NCBI RefSeq assembly: GCF_947568905.1
Contig: NC_079167.1
Coordinates: forward strand, 22,630,001 to 22,694,000
Length of the DNA: 64,000 bases
Direction of reading: 5' to 3'
Source: Ostrea edulis
Lineage: Eukaryota
Part shown: in pieces, positions 2 to 61,444 of the stretch
Layout of the letters: the number at the start of each line of letters is the position of its first letter
How positions within the stretch are numbered: position 1 is the first letter of the stretch
Notes under the pieces: generated by a model
The model's database searches: none
Seen by the model: only the letters and a program-made list of their open reading frames with translations
What the model was told of the DNA's origin: nothing
Position numbers and translations under genes: made by a program

Positions 2-2709
2 CAGCGTCAGAGGTATCTCAGTGGAGCCGGTGTCGTCGGCGTCGGTATTTTGACTTGTGTTGTCATCAACAGGTTCCGCTGTTTCCTGACTATTGTCATC
101 GACTAGTTTGTCTTCTTGACTTGTCTCGTCGTTAGTTGGTTCAACATCCTCTTCTTGACTTTTGTCGTCATAGAATCGTTCTGATTCATCATTTTGACTT
201 GTATTATCGTCTGCTGGTTCTACATCTTGGCTGTTGTTGTCTTCAGTTACATCTGTATTATCGTCTGTTGTCTCAGTGTCTGTATCGCGACTCGTGGTGT
301 CCTCTGGCTCTGCACTTGTATTATCGTCTGCTGGTTCGACATCAGTGTCTTGGCTCACATCAATATCTGCGTCCTGACTATTATTATCGTCTGTTGCATC
401 TGCATCGATGTCCTGACTTGTGTTATTATCTGGCTCAGCATCATCGTCTTGACTTGCATTGTCGTCTGCAAATTCAACATCAGTGTCATGACTTGTGTTA
501 TCGTCAGATTGTTCCTTACTCGTTTTATCCTCTGTTGAATCAGCATCTATTTCTTGACTTGTGTTGTCCTCTGGTTCGGCGTCAGCGTCTTGGCTTGTAT
601 CATCGTCGGTTTGTTTGGAGTCTACTCCTTGACTTGTGTTGTCCTCTGGTTCGGCGTCAGCGTCTTGGCTTGTATCATCGTCGGTTTGTTTGGAGTCTAC
701 TCCTTGACTTGTGTTGTCCTCTGGTTCGGCGTCAGCGTCTTGGCTTGTATCATCGTCGGTTTGTTTGGAGTCTACTCCTTGACTCGTGTTGTCCTCTGGT
801 TCGGCATCAGCGTCTTGGCTTGTATCATCGTCGGTTTGTTTGGAGTCTACTCCTTGACTCGTGTTGTCCTCTGGTTCGGCGTCAGCGTCTTGGCTTGTAT
901 TATCGTATGTTGAGTCGATTGCAGTTTCTTGACTTTTGTTGTCACTTGTTTCCACATCAGTTTCTTGACTTTTGTAGTCGTCGTTTTCAGGCTCACTTTC
1001 TGCTGACATATCCTCTTTTGATGATTCGATTTCTGCATCGTCAACATCAACAGAATTAATTACTTCACTTTCTTTTCGTGAATCATATGAATCGTCATCA
1101 TCCGCGTCTTTCTCTTTACTATCTATATCGTCTGCGTCATCTATTTTCTCAGAACTTTTTTCATCAGTGCTGTCATCGAATTCGTCATACGAAGCCGAAT
1201 TATCTTCCTCAGCAGTATATTCTGCGGAGGAAACTTCATTGGAATCATCTTTTCCATCATCATCATGATTATCGTATTCTATATCGTCCGAAAAGTTGTC
1301 TTCATCATACGAAGATTCCTTGTTTTCGTCTTTTTCAGATGACGAATTTTCTTGATTTTCAGATGACGACTTTTCCTGATTTTCAGATGACTTTTCCTGA
1401 TTTTCAGACGACGACTTTTCCTGATTTTCGGATGATGACTTTTCCTGATTTTCGGACGACGAATTTTCCTCTTTCGTTTTATCATTGCTAGTATTATCAT
1501 CTGCTTTACTGTCTTGATTCTCATCCTCGGATGAGAAATAATCATCGTAATTTTCCGATGATGTAATTTCTGATCCCTCATCTTCGTCTCTGTTTTCGTC
1601 TGAATCATTGTTATCATGTGAAGCAGTTGTGTCATCTCCCGACTTGTTCCAATCATTTTCCGTTGAAGTCGTTGTCTCATCAACATCAGATATATTCTTT
1701 TCATTTGAAGTTTCTACGTTTTCATCTGATTGATCATCTACATAATTGCTTGAGAACTTATAAGCGGTACCACTGTACAGCTCCTTTGAATTGTCGTCTT
1801 CATCGTCATTTTCATTCGAATTAGCCTCTTGTATCTCTCGACTGATCACTTTATTGATCTTATTGATTTTTTTGGAATAGTCATCTTCCTCAGTACTATC
1901 TCCATTGTCGTCGTCATCATCATCATCGTCGCCTCTTTTTAATCCCATTAATAAAAATTTGATTAAATCATCATTGTTGAAAAATTTGACAAGAGAATTA
2001 GCATTTTGACGTCTGGCTGCAAATTCTGACATCTGGATGACGTCATTTGTGTTTGGGTTGACCACAACTTTTCGTCCGGTGTTTACAGGAGCTGCTTTTT
2101 GATGAAAGAATCTTTTTTTCAGTAAATCTCCATTTGTCCCCGCCACTTTTCCCGCGATTCTCTCTTTGTAGATGTCTTCGTTGTCATCCAAATCATCCCA
2201 GTCATCATGAATTCCGCTTCTGTCGTCGTCATCGTCTTCGCTCTCCTTCTTTGGGATGGTTTTTGACAACTGAAATCCGAGAGGCAAAGGAATACCTGTT
2301 AGTCCTGTTTTTGGAGAGGTCGGCTTTTTTCTGAGGGTTTTACCTTTGCCAGACGCGGTTATGTCGACTCCGAGGGCAGCAGCGTTCGGCAGAACTATTT
2401 TTGGTTTCCACGCAGGCCGCTGCTGGACTTGCTGTCGTCTCTTGTAGACAGGCATCCATTTGCGATTTTTTTGGAATTGACGAAGCAAGGGGGCTATAAC
2501 TGTGGGCGATATCGTGCGCCGAAGGGTATATTTGGGGTTTTTGGAATTCGGTTTTCCTTTAGTTAGTTTGGTCTGGATTGAATACTGAGGTGCTTTTGGG
2601 ACTACTTTGGACGGTTTTGAAATTCTGGCCCCTAACGACGCCTTGCTCAAAGCTGATACGAGTTGGTTCCATTTTAATCTTTGGTCCACCTGTCTTCCGG
2701 CTGGTAGCC
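2..2709 (-). CDS. Large coding exon of a secreted acidic low-complexity protein (candidate shell-matrix / DSPP-like phosphoprotein); 3' end outside window
   Basis: Acceptor tttccttttTAG (AG at 2710-2711), then GG plus 902 stop-free codons (2707 to 2). LPAGRQVDQRLKWNQLVSAL... is K/R/P-rich for ~150 aa, followed by D/E/S/N/T-rich sequence (SSSENQEK repeats, SQDADAEPEDNTSQGVDSKQTDDDT repeats). The + strand ORFs in the track here are antisense shadows. Confidence 0.9.
554..905 (-). repeat. Coding 75-nt (25-aa) tandem repeat, ~4.7 near-identical copies
   Basis: ttgacttgtgttgtcctctggttcggcgtcagc... recurs with period 75 (554, 629, 704, 779, 854). Confidence 0.95.
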
Positions 2710-5128
2710 CTAAAAAGGAAAACAATACTTGTAAACGATCATAGTTAAAGCGAATGCACATGTAAAAGATTGAAATGAAAGTTATTCAAAATTGCAATAA
2801 TCTAATCTGGAACTTTACGAGTTATTAGCAATCTGATTACCAGTAATTAGCATAAGCAAAATCAAATTCAATGTATTTATATCGATATACGACACAATAG
2901 CATTGTCGATAATCACTTGTGGTTTATTTTAGAATTCCGTAAAATTATGAAGTAAGAAAGGACAAGTGGGACTCCATGATGAATTAGACTGTGAATGGGT
3001 GTGATGTATATCAATAAAACTAAATCAAAATACATCACAGCTGAAGATATCAAGACTTACTAGTTATCAATTCAGAAATAGTCGCGCGGTTTTTTATATT
3101 GATGGATTACACAATAGATCGATACATTTCTCTTTTCATTGTTTTTTTTTTTTCACAGAAAATATGACGGATGTCTCCATGTCATCAAATATTAATTGGA
3201 TTCGATTTGGTCAAATAAGAAAAAATCGACACAAGAAAATGCATGATTTAAGTTTTTTTTGGGGGAGTTGGTAGTTTTTCGTTTCATCGCGAATCACCCG
3301 CATACAAAGTAAAATTGTTTATAAGTGACAAAACCACAACTAATATTTTAAGTTTAAAATAAAAAAGATGACAAAATTTAACGAACAAATCAAAATAGAA
3401 CGAAATAGTATGAGAAATACAAGAGTTAAGAAATACCTAAATTCCAACCAAAAAAAATATAAATTGTATTATTTAAGCATTTTCACCAAAATGTCTGGAA
3501 GTGACGCACTAATTAATAAATGAATATCATATCAAAAGCTGTCAAATAGATAAAATTTGAATTGTTAATAAAATTTTATTAATTAGTTTCAATCATGAAA
3601 TCATTTGTAAGGTCATAATCCCTAGAAAATGTCACGAGAGTGTTCCGACAGTGCTGTCTGTACTCGGCACAACGTAGAATTCTCTTGTGTCACGTGATGG
3701 GATCCAAATATTATTTACATAACATTTGAAGATCAGTGAAGTTATAATTTTTTATTTAAAAAATTCCCAGCAATAAATATCCTTATGGGTACTTATACAT
3801 ATGCAGCTTATTACGTCTGATAGGTGTACATGTATTTTGCAAATCATAAATTTTGTTCGTCGAAAAGCATAACATACAGTGAAATAGAAAGTACCACATG
3901 AAAATTACATTTTGTGTACTTTTCACACACTGTTCTATTGTAGTATCAGAGATTGATATCTAATAATCAATCTCTATTTCGATGAATTTATTATCGACAA
4001 AATTATAGTTTTGATTAGGAGAAACGCGCACATCATTCATTCATTACATTCATGACAGGTTCCTACATTTAGTTTAACTCACCAATCTACTTTCAATACT
4101 ACATATATATATCTATAACATCTAAACTTTTTTAAGAGTCAGAATTCAGGTTATAATTAGTTTTTAAGAACTATTTGATTAATTAACCTTTTTAACTAGA
4201 ATCCGTGGTTGGGCAATAAATTATTTCTGTTAAGGCGACCTTTTCCATGAAGTGAAGTTTTTCTATTATCTCATTGTGAATAATGAAATAAAACCACGAT
4301 CTGAAGGTCCTAGAGCGACTTGGTTTTTATTAGATACATCATTATTAAATTTTAAAGTTTCTTTGAATGAATTTCAGCTAAACATTCTAGTTTTACTATG
4401 CAAATTGACTCATTTTATAAAGGAATTCATTTCAAGGTTGATGTAGCAATTTCTTCAACAATAATTAAATCTATCTAAACTAAAAACATTATGTAGTATA
4501 TGCTTATATTACCAAATGCAAGTATGCACAAATCTAAACTACATCATCGGGTATTTGTAGCGAAATACACAATGAATCCATTCAAATTCAAAATGTAGTC
4601 AAGCAGATTTGGATAACATTTGATGAATTGATGTATAGTAGTTTTGTTTTATCTGGACATTTCATATCATTTTAAGACACTCTTGACCCGTATCCACGTT
4701 TTCAAGTTGACACCGCATGTTTTTGATATCAATATACTTGTACAATACAAAAACTTCACAGCAGAATAAAGGGCACCTGCTGGGCTCAGCAGAATAAAGG
4801 ACACCTGCTGGGCTCATTTGACTAAGCAGTTTTTTCTGGATATCATTTCTGTGTTGCTGATGGCGAAATATATTTTGTGAATCTTTAGTAAAGTAAGATA
4901 TTTTGTATTGATTTCGTAGAATTACGAGTTTCTAAACAAATACAACTTTGGAAAAAAGAAAACATGAGAAAAGTAAAAATACAAGAAAAGTAGAAATACG
5001 ACAATAGTGAAAATATGAGACATCTTTATCTTAAATTGAGAATCTTCTCACCAGTCCCATAGTCGTGCTGTGTAAAAAAAAAATAAAGTATCAAAGGAAC
5101 ACACACATGCTAGCACGCACAATACACT

Positions 5129-5136
<8 letters not shown>

Positions 5137-5192
<56 letters not shown>
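5137..5192. repeat. Compound (CA)n(GA)n microsatellite
   Basis: Seen directly. Confidence 0.95.
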
Positions 5193-5193
<1 letters not shown>

Positions 5194-6311
5194 ACTCGAT
5201 CACAGATCAGCGTCTTTGAATTGGTGAAATGTGATGAGTGGGAGAAAAGAACTATATGACTGTGATAAGTCTGCTATGTGTGGTTATCGGTGCCAGTGTG
5301 GATCAGATGTTGGGTTCAGGACACCACCACCCACCCCCCCCCCCACCCCACCCCAATAATTTTCAAAAAGCTCTTTTAAAAAATACCCTCACTGGTTATT
5401 ATAACAGAAATGAACCTAAGAACCTGTGTCTCAAAAGTGTAACATATGTACATATTTAGACCAAATATTTATCAGATGTTGTAACGATTTATAATCTGTA
5501 TCAAACGCATCACCGAGAAAAGGCATGAATTTAGCAGCTACTTTCCAATCAGTCAAAAAATCTTGGGTACAGAATGGAATCCGATTGAAAATCTCATCTA
5601 CAATTCTCTGGCATCACCACAGCAACAGAATGTCAATAATTTACGATAACTCAATAGACCAGGAAAATGACGGAAATATAGTTTTCCTGTTCTTGGGTAT
5701 GTATGATTTATATATCACATCCCTGTCGACATATCAATCGGTGAGAGGAGAGACTAACACTAAGGACAGGGTATTAACATTGATGTGTGGTGAAACACCG
5801 GGCGTCCTCTTAATGTCAAGGACACCTAATACAAGCCTTAAAAAAAAAAAAATTAAAAATGGATACATTATTTGATATATATGTTTGGATTAGTTTGGTT
5901 GTCATAAGTATAAATATAAAATTTCTATTTTTATGAAAAATAAGGAACGTATTCATTTTCATGATTTTTGGGAGAAAATAATTGTACCAAGTGTCGTTTA
6001 ACTTCGGTAGCTAACAGTGACCTATCACCTCTACTGACCAGAAACACCCCGGCTCCAGGGCGGGTTTTGAAGCATATCATGTATACATTTTGCTCATGAA
6101 ATGCTGCTAAGATCCATCCGGAATTCACCGAAAATATCCCTGTATCCGCTTGAATACTACACCACTGCGGTATACTCAGCAGCGGGAAGTACTCTTCATA
6201 TGATATCCTCCAAGTAATTAAGATTTCACTCAATAGCACACGTGCAAAAATTAATTTTTAAAATCCTGCAACACAATGAGAATAAGGCAAAAAAAGGCAA
6301 GCCATAATTAC

Positions 6312-6372
6312 CTTCTATTGTAGAGTATTGGCCGAGCACCACCAACGCAACAACGGCAAATACGGCAATCAT
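6312..6372 (-). CDS. Signal-peptide exon of the acidic secreted protein (MIAVFAVVALVVLGQYSTIE-G)
   Basis: Acceptor attttgttgcgtttcAG (6383-6384), 10-nt UTR, ATG at 6372, hydrophobic h-region, donor G|GTAATT (6310-6311). The phase-1 donor matches the 2-nt start of the 2709 exon (G+GG=Gly). Confidence 0.8.
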
Positions 6373-8604
6373 AGTGAACACGCTGAAACGCAACAAAATG
6401 AATATTACATTCAAGGGTGTTTAACTAACTGTAATAAACTACTAAACAATGTATAAAAACCGAATACTGAATTTATAGGGAACATAAAATCTGGAAGATA
6501 TCACAAAGCATCATAAGTTTGCGCGTGTTCACTGTGCAGCAGAGACTGCACGTGAATGGGTCAAGAGAAAATGAAACTTACAAACGCTCGTTCGCCGTTG
6601 TCTTCAATTGTTTGACAATAATATGCGAATCTCGCAGTTATAACACCCATCTTTGAATTTTAATTAACGGTTCGAGGCACTGATGGGAGAATTAACAAAA
6701 AAGAAAAGTTAGGTGAATTGCTCAACCATGAACCATGCTGTTAAGTGACATTTTAATAATCTTCTGAATTATTACAGCAAATTAACTTATGAATATAAGA
6801 CAATCGCATATTGAATATTGAATTAGCATCTATTTCCTACACACGACTGACACATTCAATATCGCAATCACGCGTCCATTAGTATTCCCCGTGCATTCTA
6901 GTGATTGTAAGGCTGTCAATACAGGTTTCAAACGATCATTGACATTCTATTTCTTGGTATGTAGAAATTAAACGATTAAGAATATATTTGGTGAACATTC
7001 ATCGTGAGGGCAATCCATCAGTGTATTCAGTGAACAGTACACGATTTTCAGGTTGAAATTCGGTATTTATGCAAAATTGTATGTGCACAAATGATGCAGT
7101 TAATAATTCGTCACATAAATATTAATATAAAATTCTTTTGTTTAAAGAACATAAATAGGTATAGAAATAATTCAGATAAGATTTTTACCTTTATTCAACA
7201 ATTATAGAAATTATTTAGATCGGGTTTGACCTCTGTTTGGCAGGTGCGCGAATTGCATTTCGACACTCCTTAAAGAGATAACTACTTTTGGGGTATGTCT
7301 TTGCAGATTTTTTAAAAAGTTTTTACGCAACTACACAAACCCAACAAATTAACACGGAAGTAGAAAATAAAACAGCACAAAAAGAAGGAAATGTGTTGTC
7401 CGACATTGCACACCTACATGCTCGTTTACAGGATACCCTCCTTCACTGTGCCCATGTTTGCATAACCCTTAGCGAACTGTATAAAGTTAATAACATTGTG
7501 CAAAGTTCATAAAAAAGCTATTACTTTAAAAACAACTTTCATTAAGTAATGAACCACACACACACATCCTTACATCGAATTCCTCCTAGGGGAAACGCTA
7601 TTAGAATATAGTGCACACCAAATGAAGACACAATTGTATACTTAATTACGACCTATAACACAGGAACATATCGCACAACAGTTTCTCCCAATTGTTTTTG
7701 TGTGGTCAAACTGAAAAGGTATATTATTCCTGTTTTGCATGTAAAAACATGAACGCCCAAAATGATTTAGCAAACTTAACCAGCTGACTATCATTGACAC
7801 TGGTCTTTTATTTTGGTGAAATAAACATCCTTTTACCAACGTGAATAATAATATTTTTGTAGTGTGCAAAAATACATATCGAGACGTAGGTTAATTTTGT
7901 GATTTATATGCTTGTAAATTGTATATATCACAAAGAAAATATTCACTCAGTTAAAAGAATTCGCGTCCAATCCTTTTGTACACACGACACAATATTTACA
8001 TTTCCAATCGTTTTGCCATTAATATATCAGCAAACTGTACCAATAGCCATTTCTTCATGAATGCGTTGCTGTTGTAAACAATGCGTGCATAAATGCAGAT
8101 ATATATAGCACGTCTATTCTGACGCCCGGGAAATCCGACGGCATTATTTCAAAGTAGGATGTAGAATTCCTTGAACAATTTCACATCTTTTGTGATAGGT
8201 AAGCTTCGCAATAATTCTGTTTTCCTTTTTCCGGGTACCTTGACAACGAACGCTTTCACAAGATTAGTCATTGTTTTAATATTGTTTCCATAAATTCAAT
8301 AAGCATCTATTTTGTGTCTTTTGGTGTCTCATTCTAGCCAAATCTGTTTTATATTTTTTAAGGGGTGGGTTGGGTGTTTGGCTGTTTGCTCTCCACCCCC
8401 CTCTCCCCATTTTTCTACATTCAGAACGCTGTCCGCCTTTCAATACATTTTCTAATAAGCGATTCCCAGTAATCTACATACATGTTTGAGAATTAGTCTT
8501 ACTGTGTGTTTAATCTCATTAGAATTTCATAAAGACAACTTACTTTTGATTGGCTGTATAACAGACTAGCCAATGCTGGTTTAATGGTGTTAACAGCGAG
8601 GCCA

Positions 8605-22778: not shown

Positions 22779-22926
22779 NNNNNNNNNNNNNNNNNNNNNN
22801 NNNNNNNNNNNNNNNNNNNNNNNNNNNNNNNNNNNNNNNNNNNNNNNNNNNNNNNNNNNNNNNNNNNNNNNNNNNNNNNNNNNNNNNNNNNNNNNNNNNN
22901 NNNNNNNNNNNNNNNNNNNNNNNNNN
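22779..22926. other. Assembly gap (148 N)
   Basis: Run of N. Confidence 1.
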
Positions 22927-43454: not shown

Positions 43455-44690
43455 ACAAAAAAGGGCGGTAACCTAAAAAAGACAGACAACAACATATATA
43501 GAGGGCGGTGACTTCAAAACAGACAACAAAAAACAAAATATAGAGGGCGATAACCTAAAAAACACAGACAACAAAAACAAAATATAGAGGGCGATAACCT
43601 AAAAACACAGACAACAAAAACAAAATATAGAGGGCGATAACCCACAAAACCACAGGCAATCAAAACAAAATATAGAGGGCGGTAACACCCAGAAACACAG
43701 ACAACAAAAACTAAATATAGAGGGCGATAACCTAAAAAACACAGACAACAAAAACAAAATATAGAGGGCGATAACCTAAAAACACAGACAACAAAAACAA
43801 AACATAGAGGGCGATAACCCACAAAACCACAGGCAATCAAAACAAAATATAGAGGGCGGTAACTTCAAACAGACGACAAAAACTAAATATAGAGGGCGAT
43901 AACCTAAAAACACAGACAACAAAAACAAAACATAGAGGGCGATAACCTAAAAAACACAGACAACAAAAACAAAATATATATAGAGGGCGGTAACCCAGAA
44001 AAACACAGACAACAAAAACAAAATATAGAGGGCGGTAACCCAAAAAAACCACAGGCAATCAAAACAAAATATAGAGGGCGGTAACCCACAAAAACACAGG
44101 CAACAAAAACAAAATATAGAGGGCGGTAACCCATAAAACACAGGCAACAAAAACAAAATGTAGATGGTTGTAAATCCAAAACAGACAACATAAACGAAAC
44201 ATTATGGAGGGTTGTAACTTCACAACAAACAACAAAAACAAAATATTATAGAGGTTTGTAACCTCAAAACATAGACAGATAAAACAACAAAATGCAGAGG
44301 GTGGTAACCCAAAACACAATCAACAAAACCTAAATAAAGACGGTGATAACCTTAAAACAGACAACAAAAATCAATATACAGGGCGGTCTCCTCCAAAACA
44401 CAGACAACAAAAACCAATATACAGGGCGGTCTCCTCCAAAACACAGACAACAAAAACCAATATACAGAGCGGTCTCCTCCAAAACACAGACAACAAAAAC
44501 CAATATACAGAGCGGTCTCCTCCAAAACACAGACAACAAAAACCAATATACAGGGCGGTCTCCTCCAATACACAGACAACAAAAACCAATATACAGGGCG
44601 GTCTCCTCCAATACACAGACAACAAAAACCAATATACAGGGCGGTCCCCTCCAATACACAGACAACAAAAACCAATATACAGGGCGGTGT
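43455..44690 (+). repeat. A/C-rich 40-43-bp minisatellite with two sub-arrays
   Basis: Left unit tagagggcgataacctaaaaaacacagacaacaaaaacaaaata; homogeneous right unit tacagggcggtctcctccaaaacacagacaacaaaaaccaata (period 43). ORFs in the track here are repeat artefacts. Confidence 0.95.
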
Positions 44691-45854
44691 ATGGAGAATG
44701 GTAACCCAAACAAAAAACTTTTTGCGACAATTATAGTACAATTTCATAAGAAAACACATGTACGTGGTATCAATCATTGAAAGTTTACCATATTCTCTAA
44801 CAAAGTGTGTTTACAGTGGTAAAAGTACTGGTAATAATATTAGATGTTTTTGTAGTTAATTTTCAAAGGCCACACAGGAAAAGGGGATTTGCAAGGAACA
44901 TGGTAGAAACCAAACTTCTACCATCCGGTAATTCAGCTGATTAAAAATCACCAAAATGTATAAGATTTACTTAGAAAACTTTTGCAATCCCAATTCATAA
45001 CGAAATTATAATATTGTCATTGTCTGGTCAAGTCATCATTTACAAGCTCCAATATAGAACAACAACAGACATCAGAATTCCTGATATGACAAGCATGCAT
45101 TTTATTCATTTAAAAAAAATGGTGTCAGAATATCATCTTGAAAAGTGCACTAGTTGCATTTTTGAAATGTTTTCTTCTGTTAGCAGTAAACTCTTGAGAG
45201 CACAGCCTACACTCCCGCGAACGTAGGTACCTCTCGTAACTGTCATGTGTTTGACAGGACTTAATTAATTCCTTACAGATGGTAATTACAAGTAATAATC
45301 ACTTCTTTTGAACAAGCGAGAAAATACGTCGTCCCACAAGATGTATACAGGAAACGACGGTTTACTGGAAATACATCAGCGCTCACGTAGAGGCGACCCC
45401 TCACCAAAATTAATACACAGATTGACATTGTAGACACGAAATGATCTCCTAATTAATAATTATTCAATGAAAAAGCGTGCGTCTTGTTTTTGATCAGATT
45501 GGACACTAATCAATGTATGCACTTTGTCAACATATTAATAATCAGTTGTGTATTATCAATCAATTATTGCAGACGGTATGCACATTGTGTGTTTTCAGCT
45601 CCGGTTCTGCAAACAATTTCTTTTTACCAAAAAAAAAAATCGCCTGTTTGCTCTCAATATATTTAAATGATCTGGAACACTTTTTTTTGGATATCAAATG
45701 TTTAGAAAGTATCTAAGACACTGGATAAATATGTTTCTTAAATTCTGTCGTACGCTGGTGATACTGTGCGTGCAAACCTCAGAATCAGAATTTGATCTTC
45801 AGAAAACAGCTGTCCGTCTTGTGCATGGTTAAACCAGACTGTATAAACGTAATC

Positions 45855-59154: not shown

Positions 59155-61135
59155 AAAGAGACCCATGGGCACAATGCTGACCTGAGCCCTGGTGTTTTTC
59201 AGATGAAAATTATTTTCCATGTACAATTTTGACCCCATATTATGAACCTAAAGCTAGCCCATGATGTCATGATTTATCCGAACTTGAATCCACACAACAT
59301 CGAGATGCTTCAATATCAATACTAGTGACACAGCTTTCCTGGTCTGAAGAATATTTTTGAATTCCTACATTCACATATTATGTGTAGGGTCCACACAGCT
59401 TTGAAATGTTTACATATCAATAAGATTTGATGTCACTCTTGTGAAGATTTTTTTTTTGATTTCCTGTATATTGCTATGTAATACTTTAGCCCCACCCTAG
59501 CCCCAGACTAGAGGCCATGATTTGATTAAATATGAATCTGCACTACTTTGGAATTCTTGCATGTTGATATGGCTAATCATGACCAGTGATTCATAAGGAG
59601 GTTTTTTAAGTACTGATCAACAGTCCATGTAAAATTTTGGCCCCACCCTACCTCCCAGAACCATGATTCAAAAAACTTGAATCTACACTATCTTAATCTT
59701 GGTTCAGATTCATCTCGGCTGGATACCAGTATTTGGATTGAAACCGTCAGGCCCCAAGTCCAAATATCCAGCTGAGCCAAATCTCACTCAAGATTAGCAC
59801 TACCTGAGAATGATTGCAAGACTAATCAAGACCCTGTTCTTCAAGAGAAGGTTTTTTATTTTTCTTCCCATAAACTTCGAATCCATATTATGGCCCATAC
59901 CCACCCCTGGGGCATTGATTTGAACAAACTTGAATCACGATCCTGCTGTTCTATGTTTTATGCAAAACTTTGATCCTTTATGGCCCCACCTTGCCCCCCC
60001 CCCCTCCCCCCCCCCCCCCCCCTCCTGAGTAACAACATGAATAGACCTGCACTATCTGAGGTCGCTTGCATATTAATATGACTAATCATAGCCCTGCTAT
60101 TTTTGAGAGGGTTTTTCCAACAAAATACCATGTAAAACTTTGATCATCTATTGAGACCCAATCTTACCCCCAAGCCATGGTTTGACAATCTTGAATCTGC
60201 ACTACCTAGAAATGCTTACATATTATGTTGACTAGTCATGTTCCTGCTGTTCTTAAGAAGATATTTAATGATTATTCCCTAGGCCTCACCCTAACACTCT
60301 GGGGTCATGATTTGAAGAAACTTGAATCTGCACTACCCGAGAATGCTTGCATATCTAATAGACTAATTATGGGCTGGCTGTTGTCGAGAATATGACTTTG
60401 AAAATTATTTTCTGTATATTTTATGAAAAAATTTGACCCCCTATCATGGCCCCATCCTTTCCCCTGTGCCATCATTTGAACAATTATATATGTATCAAGG
60501 TCTTTTATGAGTTTCATATTTTCTAGCCCAGTGGTTCTTCAGGGCTTGAAACTAACTTTTTATGTCACCAGTCCAGCCGGACTGATGGAGTATAATTTCA
60601 ACCAGTCTGCAGAAAAAATTACCAGTCCAACAGAGTTTTCCAGAAATAATTAAACATATTTCGTTAATGTTATCAAAATGAAATTTAACTCAATATGCCT
60701 CAGACAATATCGTAACACTAATGTTGGATTTATAATTTACGAATCAAATTTGTCTGATATCTACAGATCGAAGCATGTCAAATGTGTGTATAAGATTTCA
60801 TAAGTATATTTTCCAAAATGATGCTTTAGAAAATTAACCAGTCCTATCAGACTAACAAAAACAAATGTCACTCAGTTTGCCAGACTTTTGACCAGTCACA
60901 GACTGACGGGCATATACTACTTGCGAGCCTTGTTCTTGTGAGCAAGATGCACTCTATTTTTTTTTCTTGATCATCTTCTTTTAGAAGGGGACATGACTCT
61001 TCATTTGAACAATTTTGAATCGCCTTTACCCAGGGAAGTTCTGTACAAAATTTGGAAACCCAGTGGTTTTAGAGAAGAATGTAAGAATTTACAAATATCA
61101 AGTAATCAGAAAAACTCACTTGAACTTTGAGCTAA
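59155..61135 (+). mobile_element. Decayed Helentron-type / Cg170-like array in a WIPI2 intron, with a nested hAT-like insert (60540-60932)
   Basis: Repeated ttgaatctgcactac units; insert ends cagggcttgaaa / ttgcgagccttg interrupt a cagtggttctt..gag motif. Confidence 0.65.
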
Positions 61136-61154
61136 AAACAATGAAATATCTTAC

Positions 61155-61349
61155 CAGGTTGATTGTGTCAAATATCTGCACTTCCCCTATCTGGTTACTA
61201 CCGGGGTAGGCCAAGAAGCAGTTGTCATTGTTGATGGACAGTGCACACAAACCATGGTGGTTAGGAGGCGTGTCTCGGATCGTGTGAAGGACCTTCATGT
61301 CTCGTATATTGTGGATGTATAAACTCTCTTCTAAACATACTATCAGCCG
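61155..61349 (-). CDS. WIPI2: WIPI2 exon ([30 protein letters not shown]...FDTINL); upstream exons not found in window
   Basis: 195 nt, phase 0, GT-AG; closely matches my recollection of WIPI2. Confidence 0.97.
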
Positions 61350-61444
61350 CTGTAATAAGACAAATGGATTCTTATAGTCTACACAATGTCACTGTGAAAG
61401 TATAATAAGTGCCTTTGATTTCTCTACAAATTGTAATGATAACC

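What the first reader, a model, noticed from the sequence alone, without database searches (positions are those of the whole stretch)
2..6384. Hidden secreted basic-then-acidic protein of at least 923 aa: candidate molluscan shell-matrix protein convergent on SIBLING/DSPP
Seen: a signal-peptide exon splices in phase (G+GG) to a 2.7-kb stop-free exon absent from the ORF track. The product has ~150 aa of K/R/P-rich sequence with almost no acidic residues, then over 600 aa of D/E/S/N/T-rich disorder, with many S-x-E/D motifs (SQE, SSE, SNE, SQD) and N-x-S/T sequons (NTS, NKS). Established: mollusc shell matrices contain secreted acidic low-complexity proteins, and the kinase Fam20C phosphorylates S-x-E in secreted biomineralisation proteins. 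Inference: this is a Ca-binding phosphoglycoprotein whose basic head could anchor to chitin or anionic matrix.
Basis: partly seen in the sequence, partly recalled or inferred. Interest (0 to 1): 0.75.

Follow-up and report, generated by a model that had tools for sequence, protein, structure and literature searches.

The report
Hidden oyster gene for acidic secreted protein
A real, transcribed but poorly annotated oyster gene encodes a protein of at least 923 residues with a secretion signal, a strongly basic head and a very long acidic, floppy, repeat-rich tail; it looks like a calcium-binding matrix protein such as those in shells, but where it is made and what it does are still untested.

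Summary
On the minus strand, an exon with an ATG and a hydrophobic signal-like segment (6382-6312) joins in phase to a stop-free exon (2709 to the window edge, 902 further codons). Spliced contigs from two runs with no depth across most of the intron show exactly this junction.

Coding is supported by pN/pS of 0.31 against a roughly 2% divergent relative, in-frame indels only, and a collinear open frame in Magallana gigas. There the gene exists only as two fragmentary, unnamed UniProt models.

The first 155 residues of the product are net +32. The rest is about -203 (calculated pI 3.6), has no Cys and is predicted disordered. It ends in about 25 degenerate 12-13-residue repeats built on D-D-N-T-S-Q-D/E. 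No Pfam, PDB or other relatives were found outside oysters.

It is not folian-cv1, not a SIBLING and not a detectable relative of MSP-1 or Aspein. The shell-matrix and phosphoglycoprotein reading is plausible (about 0.45) but rests on composition and analogy. Tissue, secretion, phosphorylation and any chitin anchoring are untested.

The parts
6582..6596 (-). 3' end of non-coding exon 1 (5'UTR). The true start is unknown, probably about 6612, downstream of TATAAC at 6642-6637.
   Evidence: The 15 loose letters beyond 6382 in the X1 contig match only this place in the window. They are followed by the donor GTAAGT. TATAAC position.
6383..6581 (-). Intron 1 (199 nt, GT..AG)
6312..6382 (-). Exon 2: 10 nt of 5'UTR, the ATG at 6372, 20 codons of signal-like peptide (a 13-residue hydrophobic core, then GQYSTIE) and the first base of a split Gly codon
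   Evidence: Mean Kyte-Doolittle hydropathy of the core is 3.15. The same segment opens the M. gigas model P0002.
2710..6311 (-). Intron 2 (3602 nt, phase 1). It holds a high-copy repeat at about 5320-5519 and an (AC)n(AG)n microsatellite.
   Evidence: Joint 2708/6311 in runs X1 and X2. Those runs have no depth across most of the intron apart from repeat bins. Microsatellite.
2..2709 (-). Exon 3: 902 codons with no stop, still open at the window's left edge
   Evidence: RNA contigs cover 869-2708 with no internal joints.
2246..2709 (-). Basic head, residues 1-155 of exon 3: 34 K/R, 2 D/E, 17 P, net +32
   Evidence: Collinear with M. gigas.
1721..2245 (-). Mixed-charge middle, residues 156-330. 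It holds the best-conserved islands: the poly-Asp/Trp block near residues 157-180 and residues 196-258.
   Evidence: Matches P0001 at 53% identity (E 1.3e-18) and P0003 at 63%. Alignment, conservation profile. AF2 gives only weak helices (mean pLDDT 47.5).
2..1720 (-). Acidic tail, residues 331-903 and beyond: D 23%, S 15%, E 14%, T 10%, N 8%, calculated pI 3.1
1332..1470 (-). About 6 copies of the octapeptide repeat S-S-S-E-N-Q-E-K (24-nt unit)
   Evidence: One Ser is deleted in the organism A transcript.
2..988 (-). About 25 degenerate 12-13-residue repeats, D-D-N-T-S-Q-D/E-x-D-x-E-P-x. They include a young 75-nt x 4.8 tandem array at 546-906 (97% identical copies).
   Evidence: The DNTSQE motif also occurs in M. 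gigas P0001.

Best explanation
This is a genuine, transcribed oyster gene with at least three exons: a non-coding exon, a signal-peptide exon and one giant exon. Gene-level confidence is about 0.95.

Shown here: the exon structure, transcription and splicing, purifying selection, orthology with a fragmentary pair of Magallana gigas models, and the composition. The product is a block polyampholyte. It has a 13-residue hydrophobic N-terminal signal, a head of about 155 residues at net +32, a middle of about 175 residues with conserved short islands, and at least 570 residues of Cys-free, disordered, Asp/Ser/Glu/Thr/Asn-rich repeats.

Inferred mechanism: the signal takes the protein into the secretory pathway. 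There the many N-T-S sequons could be glycosylated, and the S-x-E/D sites could be phosphorylated by a Golgi Fam20C-type kinase. The secreted polyanion would bind Ca2+ with low affinity and high capacity in an extracellular matrix, most likely the shell-forming compartment. The cationic head would hold it electrostatically to anionic partners or to its own tail.
For: Spliced contigs in two runs show the junction, and those runs have no depth across most of the intron. The frame is 903-928 stop-free codons against at most 168 elsewhere in the window.

pN/pS is 0.31 (16 synonymous, 20 non-synonymous) against a relative about 2% divergent. That relative carries only in-frame +30 and -3 nt indels and no stop.

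M. gigas proteins P0001 and P0002 match at 53-54% identity. P0002 has a near-identical signal segment. M. gigas contigs L001-L006 carry one collinear frame across residues 8-647.

S-x-E is enriched at z 6.9 and N-x-S/T in the tail at z 4.1. The D-D-N-T-S-Q-D/E motif is shared between the two genera. AF2 finds no fold.

Literature: few very acidic shell proteins are known from pteriomorph bivalves (PMC8217771). Fam20C is mantle-enriched and needed for normal shell in Pinctada (PMC5824888). About a third of Lottia shell phosphosites fit S-x-E-like motifs (PMC4094399). The dominant acidic phosphoproteins of C. gigas shell gave no peptide matching the NCBI database (PMC9456362).
Against: There is no tissue information: the RNA runs are coded and their source is unknown. 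No signal-peptide predictor was available, so only hydropathy and conservation support secretion. The n-region carries no basic residue.

The tail has 1.4% Gly and much Glu, Thr and Asn. From my own knowledge, bulk oyster soluble shell matrix is Asp/Ser/Gly-rich.

Tryptic peptides of the protein were not found in the supplements held for two shell studies or in any paper's main text. This is weak evidence because the gene is mis-annotated.

Motif enrichment is partly an effect of young tandem repeats. D at +2 is a poor Fam20C determinant. The C-terminus lies outside the window, so an ER-retention or anchor signal cannot be excluded.
Confidence: 0.45

Rival explanations
1. The protein is secreted and acidic as described, but it works outside shell mineralisation. 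Candidates are a polyanionic component of mucus or oyster cement, a reproductive or egg-coat protein, or a granin-like low-affinity Ca2+ and cargo-condensing protein of regulated secretory granules that is cut at its dibasic sites.
For: The composition is rich in Glu, Thr and Asn and poor in Gly, unlike folian-type shell phosphoproteins. There are eleven dibasic sites, eight of them in the first 260 residues. No shell proteome evidence was found.
Against: There is no Granin or mucin domain in Pfam. The tail is poor in Pro. Lineage-restricted, repeat-rich acidic secreted proteins are a typical class of shell matrix proteins (PMC8217771). No evidence places it in any of these other tissues either.
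Confidence: 0.4
2. The N-terminal hydrophobic segment is not a cleaved signal. Either translation starts further upstream, as the M. gigas model P0002 assumes, and the segment acts as a membrane anchor, or the protein stays intracellular as an acidic nuclear or cytosolic protein.
For: P0002 carries 34 residues ahead of the hydrophobic segment. The window's 5'UTR, translated in that frame, resembles the last 18 of them or so. The n-region has no positive charge.
Against: The window has an in-frame TAA at 6640-6638 and no ATG between it and 6372. The hydrophobic core is only 13 residues, too short for a membrane span. It is followed by small residues (LG|Q, EG|) in both genera.
Confidence: 0.08
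3. It is not a functional coding gene: either a transcribed low-complexity repeat region or a pseudogene with an accidental open frame.
For: Low-complexity repeats also keep several other frames open for 100-300 codons on both strands.
Against: The frame runs 928 codons without a stop and includes 330 non-repetitive residues. pN/pS is 0.31 and indels are in frame. The splice is canonical and in phase with a signal exon. The frame is open and collinear in another genus.
Confidence: 0.02

Closest known systems
MSP-1 of the scallop Mizuhopecten (Patinopecten) yessoensis, an acidic glycoprotein of foliated calcite
   Same: It is a secreted, very acidic, repeat-built shell protein of a pteriomorph bivalve with foliated calcite. 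From my own knowledge (Sarashina and Endo 2001, cited in PMC8217771), it has a basic domain near the N-terminus ahead of the acidic repeats. Both have D+E above 20% and a low pI.
   Different: No sequence similarity was detected in the exhaustive head search or the tail word search. MSP-1 is Ser/Gly/Asp-rich, whereas this tail is Asp/Ser/Glu/Thr/Asn-rich with 1.4% Gly.
Folian-cv1 (Crassostrea virginica) and its C. gigas homologue CGDSP, 'dentin sialophosphoprotein-like'
   Same: Both are oyster proteins that are secreted, intrinsically disordered, highly acidic and candidates for phosphorylation (PMC9456362).
   Different: Folian and CGDSP start with a different, mutually conserved signal and N-terminus. 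They are built of Asp/Ser/Gly blocks and lack a long basic head. They did not appear in the homology searches.
Vertebrate SIBLING/SCPP proteins (DSPP, DMP1, osteopontin)
   Same: Both have a non-coding exon 1, a signal peptide on its own small exon, a long acidic disordered body on one large exon, and many S-x-E motifs of the kind Fam20C phosphorylates.
   Different: There is no Pfam match. The intron is phase 1, whereas SCPP introns are phase 0 (my own knowledge). The RGD at residues 259-261 is absent from M. gigas. The gene is found only in oysters. The resemblance is analogy, not membership.
Aspein and Asprich (pterioid bivalves)
   Same: Both are lineage-restricted, extremely acidic, secreted shell proteins with fast-evolving repeats (PMC8217771).
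   Different: Those are much shorter, poly-Asp dominated and lack a basic head. No similarity was detected.

Membership tests
SIBLING/SCPP (DSPP, DMP1, OPN, BSP) | Sequence match to the family models (DMP1, Osteopontin, BSP_II) | tested here: not met
   Pfam scan at E up to 1 found no such family for the whole exon-3 product or its parts
SIBLING/SCPP (DSPP, DMP1, OPN, BSP) | Acidic, disordered, secreted protein enriched in S-x-E | tested here: met
   pI 3.6 and S-x-E 32 against 10.9 in shuffles. AF2 mean pLDDT is 47.5 for the first 330 residues. The signal was judged by hydropathy and conservation only.
SIBLING/SCPP (DSPP, DMP1, OPN, BSP) | Conserved integrin-binding RGD | tested here: not met
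   R-G-D is present at residues 259-261 of the window's product. The aligned M. gigas sequence has no RGD.
SIBLING/SCPP (DSPP, DMP1, OPN, BSP) | All introns phase 0, within the vertebrate SCPP gene cluster | tested here: not met
   Intron 2 is phase 1, G|GG, and the genome is an oyster's
Folian-cv1 / CGDSP class of oyster shell phosphoproteins | Shared N-terminus and Asp/Ser/Gly block composition | tested here: not met
   The published alignment shows a different signal and N-terminus. The tail here has 1.4% Gly.
Highly acidic pteriomorph shell proteins (MSP-1, Aspein, Asprich) | Compositional criterion used in the literature: Asp+Glu above 20% and pI below 3.5 | tested here: inconclusive
   D+E is 29% overall and 37% in the tail. 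pI is 3.1 for the tail but 3.6 for the known 903 residues. The criterion is quoted from PMC8217771. The C-terminus is unknown.
Highly acidic pteriomorph shell proteins (MSP-1, Aspein, Asprich) | Detectable sequence homology | tested here: not met
   Exhaustive phmmer with the first 330 residues found only 3 clusters: two M. gigas models and M. gigas-like Logan contigs. The tail word search found none.
Shell matrix protein (operational definition) | Recovered from cleaned shell by proteomics and expressed in the mantle outer epithelium | not testable with these tools
   The tissue of the RNA runs is coded. Peptide strings were absent from the text and supplements held, but the gene is missing or split in the databases those studies searched.
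Chitin-binding proteins (CBM14 peritrophin-A, Rebers-Riddiford) | Recognisable chitin-binding domain in the basic head | tested here: not met
   No Pfam hit and zero Cys in 902 residues
Granins (chromogranin/secretogranin) | Granin family signature | tested here: not met
   No Pfam hit

The most novel reading that the evidence does not exclude
This hidden gene is split into two unnamed fragments in the M. gigas annotation, and no full-length model was returned by the protein collections searched. It could encode one of the long-unidentified Stains-all-positive acidic phosphoproteins of oyster shell. Those proteins are implicated as part of the conspecific larval-settlement cue, and their peptides matched nothing in the NCBI oyster database. 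Its +32 head and roughly -200 tail would then let it self-associate or coacervate as a mineral-precursor-stabilising phase.
Probability: 0.1. Interest if true: 0.7.

Novelty: new member of a known kind. Interest (0 to 1): 0.42.

Why it matters
Acidic, disordered shell proteins are thought to control calcium carbonate nucleation. They are badly under-represented in catalogues because they are repetitive, mis-annotated and resist proteomics.

A corrected full-length model for an oyster-only protein of at least 923 residues gives proteomics and expression studies a concrete target. The M. gigas orthologue exists only as two fragmentary models, so database searches with shell peptides could not have found it whole. 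Re-searching existing mass-spectrometry data is cheap and could settle the question.

If the protein is not shell-related, it is still an unusual natural block polyampholyte, useful for studying charge-patterned disordered proteins.

Tried and rejected
Searches that found nothing:
- Pfam on the whole product and its parts: nothing significant.
- PDB sequence and profile searches: only chance-level hits.
- Word-index homology search, head region, candidates of 497-1580 residues: none.
- Word-index homology search, tail, candidates of 315-1000 residues: none.
- AF2 on the first 330 residues with a 4-row alignment gave mean pLDDT 47.5, so no fold search was run.
- Genomic context of the M. gigas models: neither P0001 nor P0002 is on record.
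- Literature: UniProt accessions and tryptic peptides in full text gave 0 papers. PMC6231486 has no supplements held. Peptide searches in the supplements of PMC10543319 and PMC6542584 gave nothing.

Readings rejected:
- Identity with folian-cv1/CGDSP: the N-termini differ.
- A chitin-binding head: no domain and no Cys.
- A conserved RGD: absent from M. gigas.
- The TATAAA near 6478 as promoter: it lies inside intron 1.

Limits:
- The joined (spliced) protein was never submitted to a search.
- The collections did not return the window's own product or the organism A transcript product. 'Oyster-only' therefore means no annotated relative in the proteomes they hold.
Full report
**1. The observation**

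Reading the minus strand from 2710 to 2 gives 903 codons without a stop. Read back into the intron, the open stretch is 928 codons. Outside this locus the longest stop-free stretch in all six frames of the 64-kb window is 168 codons, so chance is excluded. The ORF listing omits it because the frame runs off the window's left edge.

The proposed signal exon reads ATG (6372) plus 20 codons plus G, followed by GTAATT. The big exon is preceded by ttttag, and its first two bases, GG, complete a Gly codon.

**2. Transcript evidence**

One search for sequencing runs found two small runs from one study (X1 and X2, 'organism A'). They cover the exons but have no depth across most of the intron apart from repeat bins. 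It also found DNA runs of 'organism B' that cover everything.

In both X1 and X2 a contig joins 2708 to 6311 and skips 3602 bases. The ends read CT..AC on the plus strand, which is GT..AG on the minus strand.

The contigs cover 869-2708 without further joints. The run type is only guessed to be RNA, but the missing intron and the canonical splice show these are cDNA.

Beyond 6382 the X1 contig continues with 15 letters that do not follow in the genome. They occur once in the window, at 6582-6596, directly before GTAAGT. At 6385-6383 the genome reads cag. The gene therefore has an extra non-coding exon, a 199-nt intron 1, and an exon 2 spanning 6382-6312.

A TATAAC lies at 6642-6637. The TATAAA near 6478 sits inside intron 1.

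**3. Coding constraint**

The organism A transcripts differ from the window at about 2% of positions. Of the 36 listed differences I scored, 16 are synonymous and 20 are not, giving pN/pS of 0.31. The only indels are +30 nt and -3 nt. Both stay in frame and create no stop: ten residues are added, and one Ser is lost from a repeat.

**4. Relatives**

Pfam and PDB gave nothing. The word-index search found nothing for the head or the tail.

The exhaustive phmmer search with the first 330 residues of exon 3 found three clusters only. Two are 'uncharacterized' UniProt proteins of Magallana gigas:
- P0002 (157 residues) has a near-identical signal segment plus the head.
- P0001 (186 residues) has the conserved middle.

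Both match at 53-54% identity. The third cluster is a 52-residue ORF from Logan contigs.

Those contigs (L001-L006) contain no C at all over 1.5-1.8 kb. Their translations show Q read as stop, A as V, P as L/F and T as I. They are bisulfite-converted DNA. Their translation, with the conversion allowed for, matches M. gigas P0001 closely.

After converting the window's exon the same way, the two align collinearly across residues 8-647. Coverage is almost gapless over the first 330 residues and more gapped in the tail. The M. gigas orthologue is therefore also one long exon, and the two UniProt models are fragments with spurious introns.

The window thus comes from an oyster of another genus. 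Earlier notes of this scan call it the flat oyster, which I did not test.

One caveat applies. The collections returned neither the window's own product nor the organism A product. 'Oyster-only' therefore means no annotated relative in the proteomes they hold.

**5. The product**

*Signal.* M plus a 13-residue hydrophobic core with mean hydropathy 3.15, then GQYSTIEG. In M. gigas the segment ends LGQLSPAEG. No predictor was available.

*Head.* Residues 1-155 of exon 3 have 34 K/R, 2 D/E and 17 P, for a net charge of +32.

*Middle.* Residues 156-330 are of mixed charge and hold the best-conserved islands: the SEDDDDD-x-SGI-x-DDWDD block and residues 196-258. AF2 predicts only weak helices, with mean pLDDT 47.5.

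*Tail.* From residue 331 on, D is 23%, S 15%, E 14%, T 10%, N 8% and G 1.4%, with pI 3.1.

*Whole known part.* pI 3.6, net charge about -171, no Cys. Charge segregation exceeds shuffles (z 5.8).

*Repeats.* The tail contains about six S-S-S-E-N-Q-E-K octapeptides. From about residue 575 it holds about 25 degenerate 12-13-residue units, D-D-N-T-S-Q-D/E-x-D-x-E-P-x. These include a young 75-nt x 4.8 array with 97% identical copies. The DNTSQE motif recurs in M. gigas, so the motif is kept across genera, not only the composition. It overlaps an N-glycosylation sequon (N-T-S) and an S-x-E/D site.

*Motif counts.* S-x-E occurs 32 times against 10.9 expected, and N-x-S/T 23 times against 13.9. Because repeat copies are not independent, these z-scores overstate the case.

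**6. Mechanism**

Shown: the gene structure, expression, selection, orthology and composition.

Inferred: entry into the ER and cleavage of the signal; N-glycosylation; phosphorylation by a Golgi Fam20C-type kinase; secretion; and low-affinity, high-capacity Ca2+ binding by the polyanionic tail in an extracellular matrix. The cationic head would bind anionic partners or the protein's own tail.

The kinase is plausible in bivalves. Fam20C is mantle-enriched and needed for normal nacre in Pinctada (PMC5824888). About a third of Lottia shell phosphosites fit S-x-E-like motifs (PMC4094399).

A shell role fits the class. Lineage-restricted, repeat-rich acidic secreted proteins are typical shell matrix proteins, and few have been identified in pteriomorphs (PMC8217771).

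The unmethylated M. gigas exon fits a tissue-restricted gene. The methylation-expression link in oysters is my own knowledge, and this evidence is weak.

Against a major shell role, the composition is unlike the Asp/Ser/Gly-rich bulk matrix and folian-cv1 (and my own knowledge). Nothing here shows tissue, secretion or modification. I put the shell-related reading at about 0.45, another secreted role at about 0.40, a non-secreted protein at about 0.08 and a non-gene at about 0.02.

**7. Comparison with known families**

The gene is not folian-cv1/CGDSP, which have a different N-terminus.

It is not a SIBLING. There is no family match, the intron is phase 1, and the RGD at residues 259-261 is not conserved.

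It is not detectably related to MSP-1, Aspein or Asprich. It does share MSP-1's layout of a basic domain ahead of acidic repeats (my own knowledge). The head has no chitin-binding domain and no Cys.

**8. Novelty and value**

This is a new, oyster-restricted member of the known kind 'secreted acidic low-complexity protein'. It is effectively unannotated.

Its practical interest comes from one published observation. The dominant Stains-all acidic phosphoproteins of C. gigas shell yielded no peptides matching the NCBI database (PMC9456362), and a split gene like this could not have been matched whole. That link is speculative (about 0.1). Those bands are 38-55 kDa and protease-resistant, whereas this protein is over 100 kDa and contains K/R.

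**9. Limits**

- The 3' end and stop codon lie left of the window.
- The joined protein was not searched, only the exons by reference.
- The N run at 22779-22926 was left untouched.

Noticed in passing
window 5320-5519 (inside intron 2): Very high-copy repeat. Word depth is about 4667 in DNA run X3 against about 15 around it. Many loose ends with A-rich tails sit at 5368-5379 and 5409, so it looks like a SINE- or MITE-like element. It is also present in the RNA-like runs.
   Followed up: no
L001-L006 (Logan contigs ERR10960xxx; they match the M. gigas model P0001): The contigs contain no C at all over 1.5-1.8 kb. They are bisulfite-converted, and the orthologous exon appears wholly unmethylated in these samples. 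The 52-residue ORF from them occurs on about 200 contigs.
   Followed up: partly
window 6582-6642 and 6373-6382: Translated in frame with the ATG, the 5'UTR reads ..IIVKQLKTTANERFVFT-M. This is close to the supposed N-terminal extension of M. gigas model P0002 (..LVIRRLKTTVKERFVFK-M). The window has an in-frame TAA at 6640-6638 and no ATG, so this looks like a conserved 5'UTR or core promoter rather than coding sequence.
   Followed up: partly
window 61119-61388, minus strand: A stop-free stretch matches the PROPPIN (WIPI autophagy beta-propeller) family, PF21032, E 6.6e-24. It is probably an exon of a neighbouring gene.
   Followed up: partly
window 5131-5193: Compound microsatellite, (AC)19.5 followed by (AG)12.5, in intron 2.
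   Followed up: no
window 43517-44810: A block of tandem repeats keeps several frames open on both strands for 110-150 codons, for example the unit ..NKNQYTGRSPPKHRQQKPIYRAVSSKTQTTKTNIQ... It was not examined.
   Followed up: no
window 1025 and 1431: Against the organism A transcripts, the window lacks 30 nt (ten residues, DENSKNAGVE) and has one extra Ser codon in the SSSENQEK repeat. The acidic tail therefore changes length between close relatives.
   Followed up: yes
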